A program made the translations under genes and the position numbers. From Basidiobolus meristosporus CBS 931.73 (Eukaryota; Fungi; Basidiobolomycota): 64,000 nt of DNA. The stretch lies in contig MCFE01000207.1 in the NCBI GenBank assembly GCA_002104905.1, positions 64,828-128,827 of the forward strand, read 5' to 3'. A model generated the notes under the pieces. The model worked only from the letters and a program-made list of their open reading frames with translations. It was not told the DNA's origin and searched no databases. Of the stretch, positions 45,751 through 58,308 are shown in pieces. The first letter of the stretch is position 1. Each line of letters opens with the position of its first letter.

Positions 45751-47445
45751 ATACCTTAAAGCACTTCATTCACCTCTGCAAAATTTGTGGGATAGAGTAA
45801 GAGACTACTGTGCCAAGCTCCTCACAGCAAAATGGTGTAGCAGAATGTGCAAATAGATGAGTAATTAATATGGTAAGATCTATGATGTGTGATCAAAAAT
45901 ACTCAAATGATTGTTGGGCAGAATCTGTTGTACAGCAGCATATCTTTAGAGTTGGAGTTGAGGCAGAATACTTTGTGATTCTACTTTGCTTGTTGCATGA
46001 AGTGGATACTCCCTAATTGCAGAGTACCTTAGAATAACTGGTTCCATAACATGTGCCAGAAACTGCCTGGAAATCAATTAAATATTAGACAAAAGGTGTA
46101 TGATACCTATTTTGGGTTATTGGAATGAGAGTACAACATAAATACTATATGTGGATAATCTTATTATAGCTGCTAATAACCAATAAACCTTGGTAGAGAT
46201 TAAATCCAGCTTATCCAAGGAGTTCAAGATGTCCAACATAGGAGAATTCAGTTACTACTTAAGAATAAAGCACTCCACTGACAGAAGAATTCAGACTCTC
46301 AACCTAAGCCAGTCTAAGTATACTCAAGATATATATTCAAGAAGTACCAAGTTTAATACTGGAAACTGGCATCTAACTCAATGGAAGTAAACCTTAACTT
46401 GGTCAAAACCCAACCATATCAAGAGATGATGGTGCCAGCTGAAAGCCCAGCATTTCCTTACCAACCTATGGTTGGCAGTCAGATTTATATCATGCCTGAA
46501 ACATACCCAGGTATCTAATATTTAGTGGGAGTTGTTAGCCAGCATAATCAGAACTATAGATTTAGTCACATTGTAGCAGTTAAGCAGATTTTTAGATACC
46601 TAGAAGGACCTGCTGCTATCTGTTTAGGGTACTCCCTTAAGGATTCAGAGCTGGATCTTGTGAGGTATTCTGATGCTGATTGGAACACACTTACAAGGTA
46701 GAAGATGAATCCCAGGATACACCTTTCTTTTCCTCAAAGAAGTGATTTCATGCAATTCAAGAAAGCATCCAATTGTAGCACTTCCATCACAGCGGCAAGG
46801 TTTATGGCAGCCTGTGAAGCTACAAGTGAAACATTGAGTCTAAGAAAGCTCTCTAACAACTTAGGCTGATGTCAAAAAGTGTCTATCACCTATTTACATA
46901 ATAATACAGGATGTATATAATATGTAGAAGTCCAACTTTTCATGCTAGAACTAATTACATAGTGTTAACATCTTTTCATACATGAAGCCACAGTGAGTCA
47001 CTGAGTTAACTGGATTTACTGTCCCACAGAAGCAAAGACTGCGGATATATTTACAAATCTATTAGCCCAAGACAAATTTGAGTATTTTTATTGTAATTAG
47101 GACTGGTCTGTAGGGGCATTTAGTGTCATGGGAGTGTTACAACAATTGAATTTACTTAGAATATTATTACCAAAATAGCAGGTACCCAGAACATGAAAAC
47201 TCTCAAGGTTGCCCAAACAGCACCAAGCTTTGTTCACATGCTTTTGGGATCTTGCTAAGCATATTCTTAGAGTTTACAATGCAAGACTGTGTAAAAGTAT
47301 AAATACTACTGTTACAGACAAGAAATCATTAAGTGAAAACACATACTCTACTTGCTCTCCCAATCACTTCCAATATCTTCTAGACTCTTATAAAAGCTTC
47401 AAGCCTTCTGATCATGCACCACTGGGATTGCTGTGCATCAACATT
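45750..47445 (+). mobile_element. Degenerate Ty1/copia 3' part (integrase, RT and RNase H remnants, PPT, LTR about 47136-47445)
   Basis: PQQNGVAE-like motif; EIKSSLSKEFKMSNIG; YSDADW; LTR is the reverse complement of 49017-49364. Confidence 0.8.
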
Positions 47446-49016
47446 TAACAATTTGACTAATTTTACTACACTATAAAGTCTAGTGCCCTAACTGATTTCC
47501 CCTAACCCAAACATAACTAATCCTGGTTATGGTTTATTTTATTGCACCTCTGAATATACTTTTGGCTGTCACACTATTTACACTTCTACATGGTCTTAGC
47601 ATAACAAACATGTAGAATAGGCTTAGAAAGATCCCACAAACATGTGTACAAAGCTTGGGGCTGTTAGGGCAACTTTGGGAGTTCTCACATTGTGGGTACT
47701 TGATGTACTTGGTGATAGTTTTTCAAGTGGATCCTAAGAAGGAAACAAGTCAGAGTTCTCTAAGATTTGTAGGTATTAATATAAGCGACTAAGCTGGGTG
47801 AATATATTGGTGAAAATAAAAACCTTTACAACACCCCCACTCAACTCAATGCTCATACTGACTAGTCAAATTTAGACTTAAGATATTCAAATTTGTCTCT
47901 AGTTAGTGGTTTGATATATATATATATGCAATCATTTCATCTGTAGGCAAGTAAACTAAGTTAACTTGGTTACACTTGGTAGCTTCACATATGAAGTTAT
48001 GTCTAATATCTATATGCCTAGTTCTAGCATGAGAAGTTGGACTTTGATCTAATTGTTTACATCCTTAATTAGTTTGCAATAGAGTCATAGGCATTTTTGA
48101 TATAATCCTGAGTCTTGAAGATGCTTCCTGAACCACATTGCTTCTTTAGTAGCTTTACAGGCTGCCATGTACTCAGCCTCTATGGTGGAAAGTGCTACAG
48201 GGGGCTGCTTTCTTGAATTGCATAAAGTTGCGCTAGCTGGCTTATAGTAGATACTACAGACAGCAGTACTTATTTGAAAACTCAAAGATTTCAAGCAGGA
48301 ATCTCTCACTTAAATCCAGACTCTTGGTGATGGTATGAGACCAAATAGAGGCTTTTCAAGCTTGCAAGCCAAATGGGGATTGTTTTGGTAAACAGACCCA
48401 TCAGGCTGCTACAGGTCCATGTCCTCATTAATATCCCTGTTCAAAGATGCAGTTATACATCCATTTGATGTATAGTAACTTATATTTGTCTGCAAAAGCC
48501 AATAATATTCTGATGGAATTAAGCTTGGCAACTGGTGTAAAGGTTGCAGTATAGACAAGTTCTTTTGTTTGAGAGTATACTTTGGCCACAGGTCTGGCTT
48601 TGTATCTTATATTTACACCATAAGCCTTGTAATTTGTCTTGAAGACACATCTGCATGCAAATGATTTCAAGTTGACCAGCAATTTGACCAAGTTCCATGT
48701 CTGATTTCCATCAGTGCCTGATACTCCTCAGTCATTGTAGATCTCTGAGCTTTGCCTGAGGGCTATTTAGTTACAGTTTTACAGCCTGGGGCTCATTAAT
48801 ATGGAATGATTAGGTATAGGCTAACTTTGTACCCACATATATATATTAATATGAGCAATTTCTGATCTGGTTCAATCTTTTGGTTTGTAACTACAGAATG
48901 ATTACATCTGAGATATTCTGGGGCACTAATTCAGGATGAGCCATGGTTGTAGAGTCCTTGGAAGTGAGAAAATGGCACTGTTTTGCTCTGATTCAATCCT
49001 GACTATTGGTGGAATT

Positions 49017-49364
49017 TGTTGTAAGAGTCTTGGAGATATTGGAAGTGATTTGGGAGGACAAGTAGATTATGTGGTTTTCACTCAATGATTTATTGAATGT
49101 AAAGTAGTATTTATACTTTTACCTGGTCTTGGCATTACATACACGTAGAATAGGTTAAAGAAGGTCCCAAGAACATGTGTGCAAAATTTGGGTCTGTTTG
49201 GACAACTTTGAGAATTTTCATGTTCTGGGCACCCGGTATTTTGGTGAAATATTCCAAGTAAATCCCAACAAGGAATTTGGTCAGTATTCTCTAGGATTTG
49301 AGGGTAATGATCTAAGTGACTAAGTTAGGTGAATATTTAGGTGGAATTATGAATTTTTACAACA
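49017..49364 (-). repeat. Copia solo LTR nested between IN and RT of its own family
   Basis: TGTTGTAA...TTACAACA; flanks GAATT/GACTT (4 of 5 TSD bases match). Confidence 0.8.
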
Positions 49365-50493
49365 GACTTAAGATCATATTTTTGTCATTATCTGATATCA
49401 TTGTATGTAAAGAATCGGGATTTACATCAAACAACAGATCCCTGAGCTTGACCAGATTTTTTGCTTTGATACTACAGAGTCTATAGGCCTTACTATCATT
49501 GCAGTAGCCCAAAAATATCCATTTTGCATTTTGGGGCACAAATTTTGACTGATTTCTAGGCAGTTGCTTGGCATATGCTCTACAACCAAGAATTCTCAGG
49601 GGTTCAGCCATTGGTTGGTATGCATACCATGCCTCATTTACAATAAAATCCCAATGTGTTCTTCAGTAACTTCTATTTCTGAGATATATATTTGTAGCAA
49701 CTAATTACACCCAAAAATCCTGGGTTAATTTTCAATTATCAATTATAGATCTTACCACATTAATCATTGATTTGTTTGCCTGTTCTGATACCCCATTTTG
49801 CTGTGGGGGTATAGTGGTCTCTTTCTTTATACCATAAATACACAGAAGTGGATGAAGAGTCTTGAGGTATATTCTTCACCATTGTCAGAGCATATTTTAT
49901 AATTTTTTCATCAGTTTCTCTCTCCACCAGGGCTCTGAGCTCCCTAAACTTAGACAGGGGCTCTTCCTTTCCTTCCATGAAATAGACCCATATATATCTT
50001 GAATCATCATCCATAAAAGTGATCAAATATGTTGTCCCATACAAGGCTAAATTTGCATATGTCTATGCAGTTATGAGTGAATTAGATCTAATTTTTCTTA
50101 GTTTTGATTAACCCAGAGCTCTTGAATGATAGTCTGGCTTGATTCCCATATTTGCAGGCATCACAGTGCCCCGAGTTTGCTGGGGGATCAACTTTTACTC
50201 TGGAAATTAGCTGATCATTTAGTGCAAATAAACAAATAGATGTGACCAAGTCTCCTATGCCAAAGAATGGGTGTATCTTTATTTAAGTTACTTATATTGG
50301 CTTCCAAGTATCCTTGAATATAGGTCAACTTTTATAGATTCTGATCTCTGATACCCAAAGCAATAAGGAAACCATTTTGATTAGTGACCTAGCATCTAGA
50401 ATTGTCAAAACTGAAACTGAGTGTGTAACTTCATTCACTGCCTTTGGGGTTTGCCTGGATAGTTGCTTCTCCTACTGCATCAACTGTTCTATA

Positions 50494-50840
50494 TGTTGTA
50501 ATTATTAAGTAGGCACCTAAACATTCATGCTAACTTAGTCACATAGATCTTACTCTGTAATTAGCATTCTGACCTGACCAAACTTCTTGTAGGGATTTAC
50601 TTGGAATATTTTCACCAAATAATCTGGTACCCAGGTTATGATCTTTTTCAAAGATGTCCAAAAGCTCCCAAACTTTACACATATTTTTGTGACCTTCATT
50701 AACAAGCTCTACATGCTTGTTTGCTCTACTTTATTAAAAGTAAGAATACTATACTTTTGATCTATCAGTCTACAAGTGAGTAACATGTGTATCCTCTAGC
50801 TCTCCACATCACTTTCAATACTCCTGAGAATTTTGCAGCA
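50494..50840 (+). repeat. Inverted copia solo LTR nested in the protease region of its own family
   Basis: TGTTGTAA...TTGCAGCA; flanks CTATA/CTATC; empty site at about 785-795. Confidence 0.75.
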
Positions 50841-52142
50841 CTATCATCACTCATGAAAACCATCTTAATTGGAATTCCTGATATTAGGTAAAAAGCTCTT
50901 TTTGGTGTGGGAGGTGTTGAGATGCTCCAGAGTCAATACACCACATCTGAGAATCCTTGTTGGTGGTCACAATCAGTTGAGATATGAATAGTTTATCTTC
51001 AGGTGATGCAGCATTTCTCTATTGATACTTCTTTCACTAATTATCACTCTTTTTGAGGTGCCAGTGTGATGTGTGTCTTTTTCTTTGGCAGTAGTTGCAA
51101 AACAGGCAGCTGCTGCCTTCAAAGTGTATTGGGTACCTCCCTTACTGGTTATTATTGCTTATTATAGCATTGTCTTCTTCCTTCTTATTGGCACCTGATT
51201 TTCATAATTCTTCATCCAGGAGCATTCCATATACGCAATTTAAGGTCAAACCTTCAGTTCTGGACTCTAGGGCTGATACAAGACCTTAAAGCTTGTCTGT
51301 CAGGCTATTCAGGATGGTTACTATCACATCCTCATCAGTAGTTGGTACACCCACAGATTCCATCTCATCCACCAGCATGGTCATTCTGTTAATAAGATTT
51401 TTCATTTCTTCTCCTGGCTGCATCTTTGTAGTAAAGAATATTGTCTATGATACATTTTCTTAGCAGCTGAACATGACTGGTAGGTGTCTTCTAATGTCTT
51501 CCAAGCATTCTTTGTCACTTTTGCTCTTGGGCATTGAATTAGCCATTTGTCTTTAACATTAAGGCAAATGCAGTTAAGAGCACTTTGTTCTTTCATTTGA
51601 TACTTTTGGGCTTCCTCTCTCACATTTTTGAGTGGGCATTCTTTTCCCATGATAATATTCCAAATGCCTCTTTCTTATAGCAGCATCTTCATCTTCACCT
51701 TCCACACTTGGCAGTTAGACCCATCCAACTTTTCAGCAAAGGGAAAAATTCCAGTAATATTAGTAGTAGACATTGCAGAGAGTGACAGCTTGGGGTTCAT
51801 AACCTGTTGTAAGAGTCTTGAAGATATTGGAAGTGATTGGGAGGACAAATAGATTATGTGGTTTTCACTTGTTGATTTATTGAATGTAAAAGTAGTATTT
51901 ATACTTTTACATGGCCTTGGCTTAGCAAACATGTAGAATAGGTTAAGGAAGGTCCCAAGAGCATGTGTGCAAGGTTGGGGGCCATTTGGACAACTTATCT
52001 AATTCTCATGTACTGGGTAAATATTTTAAGTAAATCCCAACAAGGAATTTGGTCAGTATTCTCTAGGATTTGAAGGTAATGACCTGAGTGACTAAGTTAG
52101 GTGAATATTCAGGTGGAATTCCAAATTTTTGCAACATATATA

Positions 52143-52759: not shown

Positions 52760-54000
52760 CTACTCTTCCTAATTAATAAGGATGAAGCCAAATATTAGCG
52801 AATGTGATGTTGATCTCCACACGATCGGCCCTACCTCAATGACAAACGTTTCACTGTCGTTCACCCCTAAATATGGCGACGGGGAATCTTCCATCTTCTT
52901 GTATTGACCATAGAGGCTGTCATAGGAAAGGTTCCAGAGTGAGTACTTTCTACCGTAAAGCACCAAGGCTAGCGAGCCTAATACACACACTCCAACGACG
53001 ACCAACGCTAGGATGGTGGCGTAGAGTGAGGTGGAAAAGGAATATGCGGGGTCTAATCCATCTACTGGCGGGCGAGTAAGATCGCTAAGGATCCCACTAC
53101 TGCCCTGTCGGTATTTCAAGCCAAATGACATCTCTGGTGCTGTACTTTGAGGTAACTCTGATGTGCTATAAGGAGAAGGTGAGGAAGAGTCGTTCGTGGT
53201 TTCCGCTGGATAGGTGGACGAGGTCGTGGTGGAAAGACTGACGGCCTCTTCAGAATTCGGCTCTGGCGTAGCGGTAGGGTTTTCGGTAGAGGTAGGTTCA
53301 GCTAAGGAAAGATTTGCCTCAGCCGTGGATGTGGTTGCAGGTAATGGGCGCGTATTGAGCGGCATGGTGGCATTTGTATCTATTTGCAGTCCGTTTGGAT
53401 AGCAATCGGCAGTTGACCGGAAGTAGGTTGCGTTGATGTTCTCGTCAATCACGTTGATGTCAGTAAACGGTTGAGAGTCGTTGCATACTGAGACTGCACG
53501 CTGCCTACGAGGGAATATTAATCGTGAGCACTTCCACGGATGCATCCTCTGAGGACTTTACCGAACTTCCCGACAGACAGCGTGAATGTTGAACGTTTCA
53601 GGATCGCAGTAATCGTAGTTCATGAAACAGAGCGCCTTCCGAATGGCCAAAAAGCACTCGGCACCAGCACTTTCATATCCCTCTCTGCTCATTTTATCTA
53701 GAGAAGCTGGATTGAAACGAAGTGTGAGTAATGGCATAGTTGCTCATCCACAAGGAGGTGGGAATACTTTTGATCTGGGCGTCTGTGACCTCCACATCCT
53801 GAATCGTGGTGGCATAGTTCACCTCGGGACATAATTTAGAGGGAATGATTAGGGGTTGGCAGTGCTCGGCTTTTGGGCCAGCTGGATAAATGAGCTGAGT
53901 AAGTGGTTCAGGACGAGCAGGGAAAACAATAGTTACCCGTAGCGAGTCTAATAAATATTGCCAAAGTAAGAAATAACCTTGGGCTCGTTAGGGAATGCAT
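52760..54000 (-). CDS. Type I membrane protein, about 330 aa: signal peptide, Frizzled-like cysteine-rich domain, Ser/Thr-rich stalk, one TM helix, short Tyr-rich tail
   Basis: Manual 5-exon model: 54000-53937, 53881-53768, 53697-53562, 53504-52835, 52768-52760; all GT-AG, 993 nt in frame; introns 2 and 3 contain in-frame stops; CQPLIIPSKLCPEVNYATT and ECFLAIRKALCFMNYDYC..VCREVRQRAVSVC. Confidence 0.8.
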
Positions 54001-54484
54001 TCTACGCTGAATATCAAGGATATTCAGCAGTAAAGAACATGAGTTTCAACAAATACTTCATGTGGGAGCTAATTAAGTGGCCTATGCCATATTCAGGTGC
54101 GCTCATGTGACAGACATGTATATAATTAGTGTGAGATTCCGATTTCGAGTATTTTTGGTACTTTGGCCTAATTCACTCGATAATAGGAGTATTGAACTAT
54201 TATCATATGCGCATTGATCTACCGATGATGCTTGCTGTTGGTCGATTGTATTCGGTTGCTCCAGCTATGTGCTTATTGATGGTCAATTATATTCCTTTGG
54301 TTGTGCAGCAAGCACCTCTCTTTTCTGCCGAAGGAGAAAAATGTGGAGCGATGCCATAACTCTTTCCTCTTAGTAACCTAGCCAGAAATACCGGGCTTGT
54401 TTGGACTTGCTGTCCAGCTCCAACCTTTTAACCTCACAAACCCTCTAACCGGAAGCATAACTTGGACAATCCGAAATTCGAGTT

Positions 54485-55546
54485 ATGCACCAGCACCTTT
54501 TGATGATATTTAGCTTTTGCCTTTGTTTGCCAAGTACCGCTTCTACTAAAGCACCTGTCTACCCTAAATTCTTAATCTATGGAGGGACACCCGTCAAACT
54601 ATCTAACAGCTATCCCTGGATGGCCTTTACATACCTTCAGAATCCAGCCATTGGAGAAATGCGGTGGTGCGGCGGTGTTGTTTTGGACTCGACGACGATC
54701 TTGTCGGCGGCACACTGTTTCCACGAGAAACCAGTGGGAGAGATTCTGGTTCATTTACTGCGGCATAACCTCAAGGTAAAAGCGGAAGAGGAGGGGGGTC
54801 TGGTGGTTCCGGCGGTGAACATAACCATCCACCCCGATTGGGACAGAAACCGGGCGATCAATGATTGTAAGAATATTTTACCATGCTTTGTATAGGGGAC
54901 GTTCTAGACAACACTAATCCCGCTCCTGTAGTTGCAATATTGAAATTGGCCCACCCACTCCCTTCGCAGATAACATTTCTTCCCATCCAGCAAGCAAAGC
55001 AACCGATACCCAATCGAGCCCATGTCAAAGCGCTGGGTTGGGGTTTGACTTCAGCCACACAATATCCAGATATCCTACAGGAGATTGAGATGAGTGTGCT
55101 GGACGAGAAATTATGTATTCAGAAATACAGCTCCCTAAACATTCCATTCAACCCCACGGCTGTATTATGTGTGGGAACCGAGCAAGGAGTACGAAGTAAG
55201 TGAAGCCCACGCGAATTCCCGAGCAACCCTATACTCGTCATATTGACCCGCTTCTGACTGCGTCACAGATGTTTGTTCCGGCGACTCTGGTGGGCCGCTA
55301 GTGTCTTTTGATGGCGCTGGCAATCCGTGGCTAATAGGAATAACGAGTTATAGCGCGGGGTGTGGTATCGATGTACCAGCAGCATTCGCACGAGTCGCTG
55401 CCCAGGCAAACTGGATCAATCGCTATGTCGACCCACCAAAACCCAAAAAACCCCGGTGTACGCGAACGAGAAACACCAATTCCACTAGACGCCACAATAG
55501 AGGTAGTTTCTCTCAAGTCAACAAACATGAGGTTTATTCGAAATAA
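54485..55546 (+). CDS. Secreted S1 (chymotrypsin-fold) serine protease
   Basis: Exons 54485-54866, 54932-55195, 55269-55546; signal peptide; IYGG activation site; LSAAHC, NDFAILKL, GDSGGP catalytic triad. Confidence 0.93.
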
Positions 55547-57180: not shown

Positions 57181-58308
57181 TTAGGCTAATGGGGTCAAGC
57201 GTTTATCGGCATTGGAGGTATATCCACTAAGGACCTTCTCAGCGGTGATTTTGGCAGGAACATTGGAGGAAATGGCTCCGAACACGGGGGTTGCTTTCTC
57301 ATTGGCATCTGACGCGACCTTGAGAAGAGTTTGGAGCTCGCCAACGGTATGATCCCCAGCCCGGAGGGCTGCTTCAATGGCTTTGTAGGCAGCCAAGGAG
57401 CGATCCGATTCATCCTCAGGATAAAGCTCGGCGGCGAGTTTGAACTCTTCGGCAGCCTTGTTGCAGAGCTCCAGATCATAGGCACCATTGGTCTCGGCTC
57501 TCTCACGGTAAACGAAGCCACGAGCCATTCTAGCATGAGCAGCAAGGTATGTGCTGAATGCCAATTTATCTTTAGGTTCATTGGTTGAGCTGTCGTTCTC
57601 GATTGAAGCCAAGATGGCATCAGCTTCGGCAAGGATATCATCCAAAGAGAAGGTTTCTTTGTCGGAAGTAGTGGCATAGCCTAACATGATGGCGTTCATA
57701 AGAGTCTGTCTAAGAGCACGCAAGAAGGATTCCTTCAGGGCGGGGCCACGCTTATCACCGGCAGTGGGCTCAAGAGCGACGTTAGCAGCAACGATGATAT
57801 CGACTGCACGACGGAAATGAGCCAAAGCTTCCTTAGCTCTACCGAGGACACCAAAGGTAAGCAAGCCGACCAAAAAGGAGGCACGAATGCTGACGTCGAT
57901 GGCAGGTTGAACATCCTCCCAACCGTGGTTTTGAAGGCGTTTTTGGTATTCTTGGATCAATTCAGAAACAGGAATGTCAGAAGAAGCGCAATCACGGACT
58001 TGTTGTTCGAACATGAGGACTTTCTGGAGGCCTTCCAAATCCTTTTGTCCCTCGAGGTAGAAGCAACGAGGATCACGTAACAAAGCATCGGTGATAGCCT
58101 CCAAAGCGCCCACAGGTCCGGCAATACTGTTGGCAACGTTCTCATGTTGCTTGTATTGGGACATGATGAATTTTCCTTGCTCGAAAGATTGGATGGCGTG
58201 CATCAACTTCTCAGCTGCTGTCAAAGGTAAAGGATATTCTTCATTGTTCTTTTTCTTCTCAAGGATGACAGCATCCAAGCGAAAAACGGGGCATTGCTCT
58301 TCAGACAT
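57181..58308 (-). CDS. Intronless 375-aa predicted all-alpha (TPR-like) protein of unknown function
   Basis: Uninterrupted ATG-to-stop ORF with biased codon usage, in the CpG-normal gene region. Confidence 0.85.
   Translation of the reverse strand: MSEEQCPVFRLDAVILEKKKNNEEYPLPLTAAEKLMHAIQSFEQGKFIMSQYKQHENVANSIAGPVGALEAITDALLRDPRCFYLEGQKDLEGLQKVLMFEQQVRDCASSDIPVSELIQEYQKRLQNHGWEDVQPAIDVSIRASFLVGLLTFGVLGRAKEALAHFRRAVDIIVAANVALEPTAGDKRGPALKESFLRALRQTLMNAIMLGYATTSDKETFSLDDILAEADAILASIENDSSTNEPKDKLAFSTYLAAHARMARGFVYRERAETNGAYDLELCNKAAEEFKLAAELYPEDESDRSLAAYKAIEAALRAGDHTVGELQTLLKVASDANEKATPVFGAISSNVPAKITAEKVLSGYTSNADKRLTPLA

What the first reader, a model, noticed from the sequence alone, without database searches (positions are those of the whole stretch)
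52760..54000. Hidden receptor-like gene: Frizzled-type cysteine-rich domain lacking exactly the C7-C9 disulfide pair
The ORF track shows only the Ser/Thr stalk. Splicing four GT-AG introns (seen in sequence) gives MHSLTSPRLFLTLAIFIRLATA-GPKAEH-CQPLIIPSKLCPEVNYATT...ECFLAIRKALCFMNYDYCDPETFNIHAVCREVRQRAVSVC...DCYP, then a stalk, one TM helix and a tail with YDSL, YKKM and YLGV motifs. The first block matches the Frizzled CRD start (CxPIxIPxCxxIGYNxT), and VCREVRQRAVSVC matches PCRSLCERARAGC. The Fz CRD has 10 Cys bonded 1-5, 2-4, 3-8, 6-10 and 7-9 (established). This protein keeps 8 and lacks exactly C7 and C9, as expected if one disulfide was lost together. A single-pass Fz-CRD protein in an organism with no known Wnt pathway could be an unrecognised lipid or ligand sensor (inference). 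It does not have the architecture of fungal Mid1.
Basis: partly seen in the sequence, partly recalled or inferred. Interest (0 to 1): 0.78.

Follow-up and report, generated by a model that had tools for sequence, protein, structure and literature searches.

The report
Fungal single-pass Frizzled-type domain protein
A five-exon gene of the fungus Basidiobolus meristosporus encodes a cell-surface membrane protein whose outer head is a real but divergent Frizzled-type cysteine-rich domain with four instead of five disulfides; the gene is already annotated, so this is a modest new variant of a known domain, not a surprise.

Summary
On the minus strand at 52760-54000, five exons joined by four GT-AG introns give a 333-aa protein: signal peptide, 8-Cys domain, Ser/Thr/Pro stalk, one TM helix and a 43-aa tail.

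The gene is not hidden. It is identical to GenBank K493DRAFT_408029 (hypothetical protein, Basidiobolus meristosporus CBS 931.73). The syntenic B. ranarum orthologue has the same first three exon lengths and the same intron phases.

The Frizzled-type reading is supported by several lines:
- **Pfam:** sub-threshold but colinear Fz hits in this protein and 9 of 11 relatives scanned.
- **Sequence profile:** a family profile hits only Smoothened and Frizzled CRDs in the PDB.
- **Predicted fold:** an AlphaFold2 model (pLDDT 88) ranks only Fz-type CRDs at the top of two structure searches (MuSK Z 9.2, ROR2 8.9, Smoothened 8.3).
- **Cysteine spacing:** CX8CX6C and C6-X10-C8 are exact, with Arg in the C7 slot.

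The family is small: 15 representatives, and all ten named ones are early-diverging fungi. Novelty is modest. UniProt already calls two paralogues "FZ domain-containing", Fz-type CRDs are known outside animals, and one of the five disulfides is already known to vary among Fz-like CRDs.

Function is untested. The motif aligned to the Smoothened sterol site is charged (SREG), which argues against a lipid pocket. No RNA runs were listed. The scan noted a similar finding on another piece of this genome (s1-227763).

The parts
53937..54000 (-). Exon 1 (64 nt): start codon and signal peptide (residues 1-22; likely cleavage after the A-T-A at 20-22)
   Evidence: The exon length is identical in the B. 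ranarum orthologue. The cleavage site is inferred from the -3/-1 rule and was not computed.
53882..53936 (-). Intron 1, 55 nt, GT..AG, phase 1
   Evidence: Same position and phase in B. ranarum, where the intron is 57 nt.
53768..53881 (-). Exon 2 (114 nt): N-terminal part of the CRD with C1 (Cys29) and C2 (Cys39)
53707..53767 (-). Intron 2, 61 nt, GT..AG, phase 1. A second in-frame AG lies 9 nt downstream, at 53698.
   Evidence: The family consensus across this junction (VKxLLDKISREG) favours the acceptor at 53707.
53562..53706 (-). Exon 3 (145 nt): CRD core with the SREG motif, C3 (Cys77), C4 (Cys86), C5 (Cys93) and C6 (Cys104)
53505..53561 (-). Intron 3, 57 nt, GT..AG, phase 2. It splits the Arg108 codon, which is the residue in the C7 slot.
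52835..53504 (-). Exon 4 (670 nt): end of the CRD (Cys115 = C8, Cys142 = C10), the Ser/Thr/Pro stalk, the TM helix and most of the tail
53402..53861 (-). Coding span of the Frizzled-type CRD, Cys29 to Cys142 (includes introns 2 and 3)
   Evidence: Pfam Fz E 4.6e-4. Family profile against the PDB. AF2 model with pLDDT 88.3. Fold searches. Cys spacing.
53042..53392 (-). Mucin-like stalk, residues 146-262, 45% Ser+Thr+Pro, with three N-x-S/T sequons (152, 172, 212)
   Evidence: This region is poorly conserved among paralogues.
52958..53026 (-). Transmembrane helix, about residues 268-290, followed by a basic G-R-K stretch
   Evidence: The best 19-residue Kyte-Doolittle window scores 3.0 at residues 272-290.
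52892..52903 (-). YKKM (residues 309-312). Its Tyr is the only invariant tail residue, and the motif fits Y-x-x-hydrophobic in all seven Basidiobolus paralogues.
52769..52834 (-). Intron 4, 66 nt, GT..AG, phase 0
   Evidence: A phase-0 intron just before a tiny last exon is also present in B. ranarum. Splicing gives a ...FVIE-EE end like the FV(I/L)E(D/E) ends of paralogues.
52760..52768 (-). Exon 5 (9 nt): Glu-Glu-stop

Best explanation
This is an ordinary, already annotated gene of Basidiobolus meristosporus. It encodes a type-I cell-surface glycoprotein of 333 aa. The parts in order are a signal peptide, a divergent Frizzled-type cysteine-rich domain (residues about 29-142), a mucin-like stalk of about 115 aa, one TM helix and a 43-aa cytoplasmic tail.

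Shown here:
- the exon model;
- the Fz-type fold and sequence kinship;
- the retention of eight of the ten canonical Cys at exact spacing, with a family-wide Arg (Lys once) in the C7 slot;
- membership of a small family found only in early-diverging fungi.

Inferred:
- The four disulfides are C29-C93, C39-C86, C77-C115 and C104-C142, i.e. the 1-5, 2-4, 3-8 and 6-10 bridges.
- The CRD is an extracellular binding head, held out through the cell wall by the O-glycosylated stalk.
- Its working surface is the groove that binds ligand in Frizzled and Smoothened, but here that groove carries the conserved charged motif S-R-E-G. The ligand is therefore more likely polar than a lipid.
- The tail carries trafficking signals (Y-x-x-hydrophobic plus an acidic C-terminal F-V-I-E-E-E). 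The protein would then act as a cycling surface receptor or sensor, not as an enzyme or a 7TM signaller.
For: Gene model:
- Searches give the exons; searches show identity to K493DRAFT_408029.
- Searches show conserved exon lengths and intron phases in the orthologue, which sits next to an orthologous trypsin gene (69-74% aa identity).

Fz kinship:
- Pfam Fz is the only family hit: 21.2 bits, E 4.6e-4, residues 29-118 on profile positions 1-89 of 110.
- The same colinear hit appears in 9 of the 11 relatives scanned whole (8 of 10; P0017 plus a repeat of P0015).
- A profile of 15 family CRDs returned 26 PDB sequences, all Smoothened or Frizzled CRDs, best E 0.0021.
- Language-model neighbours are Fz clusters.

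Fold:
- AF2 model with pLDDT 88.3 and pTM 0.83.
- The Foldseek top 50 are all FZD, MuSK, ROR2 or SMO CRDs, probability up to 1.0.
- The Foldseek-independent search ranks 12 Fz-type CRDs first: MuSK Z 9.2, rmsd 2.9 Å over 109 residues; ROR2 Z 8.9; Smoothened Z 8.3; FZD4 Z 7.7. NPC1 follows at Z 5.6 and unrelated chains start at 5.2.
- Atlas TM-scores are 0.70-0.73 to 'FZ domain-containing' clusters.

Cysteines:
- The published pattern C*C*CX8CX6C*CX3CX6,7C*C*C (PMC4256011) is met at X8, X6 and C6-X10-C8 in all 17 members with an uninterrupted C3-C8 block. The C7 slot holds Arg 16 times and Lys once.

Topology and tail.

Groove motif: the alignment read against the oxysterol-contact residues named in PMC3809587.
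Against: - Every Pfam Fz score is below the gathering cut-off (14-24 bits against 32.1).
- Foldseek E-values are only 6e-3 to 8e-2, with TM about 0.5. Z values of 8-9 are in the range the tool calls 'middling', although the ranking is clean.
- No transcript data exist here. Intron 4 and the 9-nt last exon rest on comparative evidence only.
- Y-x-x-hydrophobic is a short motif, expected by chance in roughly a third of tails of this length.
- Nothing here tests binding, localisation or signalling.
Confidence: 0.8

Rival explanations
1. Lipid or sterol sensor. The CRD would bind a fatty acyl chain or a sterol in a hydrophobic groove, as FZD8 binds Wnt palmitoleate and Smoothened binds oxysterols or cholesterol. 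Occupancy would be relayed or the ligand internalised.
For: [quoted passage not shown]
- Smoothened CRDs are the best sequence-profile hits and score Z 8.0-8.3.
- NPC1 and the ergosterol-bound yeast NCR1 N-terminal domain are detectable at Z 4.2-5.6.
Against: - In the alignment, zebrafish Smoothened oxysterol-contact positions M86, W87 and G89 correspond to Arg67, Glu68 and Tyr70. Arg, Glu and the following Gly are nearly invariant in the family. That is a charged rim, not a greasy one.
- Drosophila Smoothened shows that a conserved fold does not imply sterol binding.
- No binding data exist.
Confidence: 0.2
2. Wsc/Mid2-like cell-wall mechanosensor with a different head group. The CRD would anchor in the wall, the O-mannosylated stalk would act as a spring, and strain would be passed to the short tail.
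For: The layout is the same as that of Wsc-type sensors: N-terminal Cys-rich head, Ser/Thr-rich O-mannosylated region, one TM helix and a short tail (PMC9148135). Long-form relatives carry an extra MAM/carbohydrate-binding-module-like jelly-roll, which suits wall or glycan contact.
Against: - There was no Pfam WSC hit even at E 10.
- The head is a different fold.
- Long-form relatives insert a Cys-rich module and a jelly-roll domain between the CRD and a stalk region, so the bare head-plus-stalk layout of the Basidiobolus proteins is not general to the family.
- Resemblance of layout is not evidence of mechanism.
Confidence: 0.2
3. Divergent Mid1/FAM155-type calcium-channel auxiliary subunit, since Mid1 also carries a Frizzled-like Cys-rich region.
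For: Mid1's Cys-rich domain is regarded as Fz-related. A Mid1 cluster appears in the Atlas fold search at TM 0.65. FAM155A appears at Z 4.5.
Against: - There was no PF12929 hit at E up to 10.
- FAM155A ranks 21st, at Z 4.5, below unrelated chains (which start at Z 5.2) and far below MuSK at Z 9.2.
- Mid1 has 12 conserved Cys in a C-terminal domain. Here there are 8 Cys in an N-terminal domain, followed by a stalk and a TM helix.
Confidence: 0.03
4. Artefact: a mis-spliced gene model, a pseudogene, or a Cys-rich domain of another fold (CFEM, WSC) that only mimics the Fz pattern.
For: There is no RNA evidence. All sequence scores to Fz are sub-threshold.
Against: - Exon lengths and intron phases are conserved in a second species, in synteny.
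- The CRD is 65% identical between the orthologues.
- The Cys spacing is exact in all 17 members with an uninterrupted C3-C8 block.
- The AF2 model is confident, and its top structural matches are exclusively Fz-type.
Confidence: 0.03

Closest known systems
Canonical FZ-CRD (Pfam PF01392) of Frizzled, Smoothened, sFRP, ROR and MuSK
   Same: Same helical fold (Z 7.3-9.2, 104-112 residues aligned). Colinear sequence match over profile positions 1-89. Cys C1-C6, C8 and C10 are at the canonical spacing. Like ROR and MuSK, it sits on a single-pass type-I protein.
   Different: Only 8 Cys, with Arg in the C7 slot and no C9. Scores fall below Pfam's cut-off. There is no 7TM, kinase, NTR or kringle partner domain. 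The groove-rim motif is charged (SREG). The host organism has no Wnt or Hedgehog pathway (established knowledge for fungi).
Smoothened CRD
   Same: Best sequence-profile hits (E 0.0021) and Z 8.0-8.3. In the printed alignment Smoothened also has no Cys four residues after C6. [quoted passage not shown]
   Different: Smoothened's extra bridge between its N- and C-terminal cysteines is absent here. Its sterol-contact residues are replaced by Arg, Glu and Tyr. Smoothened is a 7TM receptor.
Fungal Mid1 / animal FAM155 Cys-rich domain
   Same: A fungal extracellular Cys-rich domain regarded as Fz-related. The fold is weakly similar.
   Different: No PF12929 match. The Cys number, domain position and architecture all differ, and structural similarity is much lower (Z 4.5).
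Wsc-type fungal cell-wall sensors
   Same: Same head-stalk-TM-short-tail layout, and an 8-Cys head (the Cys count is from my own knowledge; the layout is from PMC9148135).
   Different: The head domain is an unrelated fold, with no sequence match. This is an analogy of design only.
Frizzled-like 7TM receptors with an N-terminal CRD in Mucoromycota (Atlas cluster, PF01534/PF00002) and Frizzled-family receptors reported in Spizellomyces
   Same: They show that Fz-type CRDs already exist in early-diverging fungi. The CRD fold matches at TM 0.70. The Spizellomyces report is PMC3251606.
   Different: Those are seven-pass receptors. This family is single-pass. None of those receptors was among the 15 proteins found by the exhaustive sequence search.

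Membership tests
FZ-CRD (Pfam PF01392 / Frizzled-type cysteine-rich domain) | Sequence match to the family model at or above the curated threshold | tested here: not met
   Scores are 18.3-21.2 bits against a gathering score of 32.1, and 14-24 bits in relatives. Fz is nevertheless the only family hit and the match is colinear. A family profile finds only SMO and FZD CRDs in the PDB.
FZ-CRD (Pfam PF01392 / Frizzled-type cysteine-rich domain) | Ten conserved Cys in the pattern C*C*CX8CX6C*CX3CX6,7C*C*C (PMC4256011) | tested here: not met
   Eight of the ten are present. X8, X6 and the C6-to-C8 distance (10) are exact. C7 is Arg108 and there is no C9. The same holds in all 17 members with an uninterrupted C3-C8 block.
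FZ-CRD (Pfam PF01392 / Frizzled-type cysteine-rich domain) | Core helical fold superposable on solved Fz-type CRDs | tested here: met
   AF2 model with pLDDT 88.3. The top 12 of 48,161 chains are Fz-type CRDs, Z 5.8-9.2. The Foldseek top 50 are all Fz-type.
FZ-CRD (Pfam PF01392 / Frizzled-type cysteine-rich domain) | Disulfide connectivity 1-5, 2-4, 3-8, 6-10 (the bridges shared by Fz-like CRDs) | not testable with these tools
   Model coordinates are not exposed. The pairing is inferred from the alignment of Cys positions and from the published connectivity.
FZ-CRD (Pfam PF01392 / Frizzled-type cysteine-rich domain) | Ligand binding (Wnt lipid, sterol or other) in the helical groove | not tested
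   There is only an alignment-based remark: the groove-rim positions are Arg, Glu and Tyr.
Mid1 / FAM155 (Pfam PF12929) | Match to the Mid1 model, with a 12-Cys C-terminal domain | tested here: not met
   No hit at E up to 10. There are 8 Cys and the domain is N-terminal. FAM155A scores Z 4.5.
Wsc-type cell-wall sensors (Pfam PF01822 WSC head) | WSC domain at the N-terminus | tested here: not met
   No WSC hit at E up to 10. The head is Fz-type. Only the stalk-TM-tail layout is shared.

The most novel reading that the evidence does not exclude
This would be a previously undescribed, fungus-specific branch of the Frizzled-CRD superfamily. In it, the variable fifth disulfide (C7-C9) has been replaced by a conserved Arg, perhaps paired with the near-invariant Asp123. 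The lipid groove has been re-tooled into a charged S-R-E-G site for a non-lipid ligand. The ancestral form, kept in Syncephalis, Conidiobolus and Gonapodya, would be a CRD + Cys-rich module + MAM/CBM-like jelly-roll surface receptor that cycles by endocytosis. The family would have been lost in Dikarya.
Probability: 0.3. Interest if true: 0.55.

Novelty: new variant of a known kind. Interest (0 to 1): 0.4.

Why it matters
It adds a clean, conserved example of a Frizzled-type domain working outside any Wnt or Hedgehog context, in a lineage close to the base of the fungi. It also defines a minimal four-disulfide version of the fold, with a conserved Arg where C7 normally sits.

That is useful for tracing how this mobile ligand-binding module was reused before animals adopted it for morphogen signalling. 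It also gives a small, tractable domain (about 120 aa) for asking what such domains bound originally.

It does not change current views. Fz-type CRDs were already known to be widespread in eukaryotes, and automatic annotation already flags two paralogues.

Tried and rejected
Searches that gave nothing:
- Pfam on the three larger exons taken singly by reference gave no hit; the pieces are too short.
- Single-sequence phmmer of the CRD against PDB sequences gave nothing. Only the family profile reached SMO and FZD.
- No RNA-seq run was listed for this stretch, so read laying was not used and splice sites have no transcript support.
- The word-index search with the full-length family alignment was swamped by low-complexity candidates from the stalk and returned only 3 of its own 7 inputs. 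It is useless for distribution.
- NCBIfam gave nothing.
- Pei & Grishin 2012 (Protein Sci 21:1172), the key survey of Fz-related CRDs, is not held. What I say of it comes from papers that cite it.
- A literature search for Frizzled together with Basidiobolus, Conidiobolus, Zoopagomycota, Mortierella or chytrids listed no paper that mentions Frizzled.

Readings considered and rejected:
- Mid1, WSC and CFEM identity.
- The alternative in-frame acceptor at 53698, because the family consensus keeps the three extra residues.
- The unspliced 353-aa C-terminus, because paralogues end in FV(I/L)E(D/E), as the spliced form does.

Procedure: the joined spliced model was built only inside scripts, for comparison with the database protein, and was never sent to a search tool. 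All later searches used the stored protein P0001, which is identical to it.
Full report
**What is in the sequence**

The finding lies on the minus strand. The start codon is at 54000. Five exons (54000-53937, 53881-53768, 53706-53562, 53504-52835, 52768-52760) are joined by four short GT..AG introns of 55, 61, 57 and 66 nt. Together they give an open frame of 333 codons plus stop.

The product has these parts:
- an N-terminal hydrophobic leader;
- eight ectodomain Cys at 29, 39, 77, 86, 93, 104, 115 and 142;
- a 117-residue segment with 45% Ser+Thr+Pro;
- one strongly hydrophobic helix at about 268-290, followed by a basic stretch;
- a 43-residue tail holding YDSL, YKKM and YLGV.

The joined model was built only inside scripts and was never sent to a search tool. 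Later searches used the stored database protein P0001, which proved identical to it.

**It is an annotated gene of a known fungus**

The exon-4 translation retrieved one protein, P0001: 333 aa, NCBI 'hypothetical protein K493DRAFT_408029', Basidiobolus meristosporus CBS 931.73. It equals the five-exon model residue for residue. So the gene is hidden only from an ORF track.

**Support for the exon model without RNA**

No RNA run was listed, so I used comparison instead.
- The closest relative, P0002 of B. ranarum, lies next to a divergently transcribed trypsin-family gene, as here (window 54485-55203+, Pfam Trypsin). The two trypsin genes are 69-74% identical in protein, so P0002 is the positional orthologue.
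- Its exons are 64, 114, 145, 661 and 6 nt, with introns in phases 1, 1, 2 and 0. The window gene has 64, 114, 145, 670 and 9 nt with the same phases.
- The residues across each junction match the family consensus. In particular, the stretch after intron 2 favours the acceptor at 53707 over an in-frame AG 9 nt further on. The spliced C-terminus (F-V-I-E-E-E) resembles the FV(I/L)E(D/E) ends of paralogues.

**Is the head a Frizzled-type domain?**

Several lines agree.

1. *Pfam.* Fz (PF01392) is the only family hit for the whole protein and for residues 20-150. The best score is E 4.6e-4 at 21.2 bits, with residues 29-118 on profile positions 1-89 of 110. That is below the 32.1-bit cut-off. The same colinear sub-threshold hit recurs in 9 of the 11 relatives scanned whole (8 of 10; P0017 added).
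2. *PDB sequences.* A profile of the 15 family CRDs (alignment A1), searched against all PDB sequences, returned 26 sequences. Every one is a Smoothened or Frizzled CRD, and the best E is 0.0021.
3. *Predicted structure.* AlphaFold2 on A1 gave a confident model with pLDDT 88.3 and pTM 0.83.
   - The Foldseek top 50 are all Fz-type CRDs (FZD2/3/4/5/7/8/10, MuSK, ROR2, Smoothened), with probabilities 0.82-1.0, although E is only 6e-3 to 8e-2 and TM about 0.5.
   - The Foldseek-independent scan of 48,161 chains ranks twelve Fz-type CRDs first. MuSK scores Z 9.2 (rmsd 2.9 Å, 109 residues), ROR2 8.9, Drosophila Ror2 8.4, Smoothened 8.3 and 8.0, FZD4 7.7, FZD2 7.4 and sFRP3 7.3.
   - NPC1 N-terminal domains follow at Z 5.6 and 5.3, and unrelated chains start at 5.2. 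FAM155A, the animal kin of Mid1, scores only 4.5.
   - ESM-Atlas models called 'FZ domain-containing' match at TM 0.70-0.73.
4. *Language-model neighbours* are Fz clusters.

**The cysteines**

The published FZ-CRD pattern is C*C*CX8CX6C*CX3CX6,7C*C*C, with bonds 1-5, 2-4, 3-8, 6-10 and 7-9 (PMC4256011).
- Here C77-X8-C86-X6-C93 is exact. C104 to C115 are separated by 10 residues, exactly the C6-to-C8 distance. The C7 slot holds Arg108.
- The same spacing holds in all 17 family members that carry an uninterrupted C3-C8 block. The slot is Arg in 16 and Lys in one.
- Only one Cys follows C8. If all eight are paired as in the alignment, it must partner C6, and so plays the part of C10.

The pairing itself could not be measured because model coordinates are not exposed.

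It is not an unusual loss.
- Zebrafish Smoothened shares four of its five bridges with Fz8, sFRP3 and MuSK. [quoted passage not shown]
- In the printed alignment Smoothened also lacks a Cys four residues after C6.
- NPC1 lacks both C-terminal bridges.

**The family**

An exhaustive HMMER pass over 1.84 billion representatives found only 15 proteins at E up to 1e-3. The ten named ones are all early-diverging fungi:
- five further Basidiobolus proteins besides the B. ranarum orthologue;
- Syncephalis (two species);
- Olpidium, Conidiobolus, Gonapodya and Mortierella.

Three others are unnamed metagenome proteins. No Dikarya protein appeared. All full-length members are single-pass, with the CRD at the N-terminus.

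UniProt already labels two paralogues (P0003, P0005) 'FZ domain-containing protein'.

Syncephalis, Conidiobolus and Gonapodya have long forms (655-736 aa) with an extra Cys-rich module. They also carry a β-sandwich that resembles MAM domains and carbohydrate-binding modules (AF2 pLDDT 77; VesC C-terminal domain Z 12.6; RPTPmu MAM Z 10.7). Pfam does not recognise it.

**How it probably works (inference)**

The topology is that of a type-I surface glycoprotein whose head is pushed out by a mucin-like stalk. That layout is the one described for Wsc-type wall sensors (PMC9148135), but with an unrelated head.

The best-conserved non-Cys motif, K-(I/M)-S-R-E-G, ends helix 1. In the profile alignment it lies on the Smoothened segment whose residues M86, W87 and G89 contact oxysterol. 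They correspond to Arg67, Glu68 and Tyr70. So the conserved site is where Fz-type CRDs bind ligand, but it is charged. I read this as evidence against a Smoothened-like sterol pocket and in favour of a polar ligand. Without coordinates this remains weak.

In the tail, the only invariant residue among seven Basidiobolus paralogues is the Tyr of YKKM, always in a Y-x-x-hydrophobic context. An acidic F-V-(I/L)-E-(D/E) end, often with Ser/Asp runs, is also shared. Twelve of fourteen family members have such a Tyr motif 9-24 residues after the TM helix. These look like sorting signals, but the motif is short enough to arise by chance in about a third of tails. YDSL and YLGV are not conserved.

**Comparison and novelty**

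This is a divergent member of the Fz-CRD superfamily. It is nearer to the FZD/SMO/ROR/MuSK group than to the NPC1/folate-receptor group or to Mid1/FAM155.

It fails two formal membership tests, the Pfam threshold and the ten-Cys pattern, and passes the fold test. I therefore file it as a new variant, not a plain member.

Fz-type CRDs outside animals are already on record:
- fungal Mid1, and the wide eukaryotic distribution of Fz- and NPC1-related domains;
- Frizzled-family receptors reported in Spizellomyces;
- a Mucoromycota 7TM cluster with the same CRD fold.

I listed no paper naming Frizzled together with these fungi. The scan itself noted a like finding on another piece of this genome (s1-227763).

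Interest is moderate.

Noticed in passing
window 54485-55203 (+): A trypsin-family serine protease gene (Pfam Trypsin, E 3e-11), split over at least two ORFs, is transcribed divergently from the CRD gene. The same head-to-head pair is kept in B. ranarum (69-74% protein identity), so the 484-bp spacer 54001-54484 may be a shared promoter region.
   Followed up: partly
window 49760-50044 (-): A 94-aa ORF has the look of a Ty1/copia-type integrase core, judged by eye from the translation and not scanned. The region 46000-52000 is also the most AT-rich part of the window (GC 0.36-0.38), which suggests transposon debris downstream of the gene.
   Followed up: no
window 53698 (-), 9 nt inside exon 3: A second AG, in frame with the annotated acceptor at 53707, would remove three residues (S-L-D, with T becoming N). 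Family conservation favours the annotated site, but alternative use cannot be excluded without RNA.
   Followed up: partly
P0011 (K493DRAFT_297072, another contig of the same genome): This paralogue's public model starts at C2, with no signal peptide and no C1. It also carries a 13-residue insertion exactly where intron 3 lies in the window gene. The model is probably truncated and has a retained or mis-set intron.
   Followed up: no
P0008:183-457, P0014:299-605, P0016:202-539 (Syncephalis, Gonapodya, Conidiobolus): Long-form relatives carry a Pfam-blank module between the CRD and the stalk: about 100 residues with 8 invariant Cys, then a β-sandwich resembling MAM domains and carbohydrate-binding modules (Z up to 12.6). 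The Cys-rich half was not searched on its own.
   Followed up: partly
ESM Atlas cluster, row 3: A Mucoromycota cluster of 583-aa seven-pass receptors (PF00002 59%, PF01534 Frizzled 48%) has an N-terminal domain of the same fold (TM 0.70). Its relation to the single-pass family was not examined.
   Followed up: no
window 57181-58308 (-): A long uninterrupted 375-aa ORF of unknown identity was not examined.
   Followed up: no
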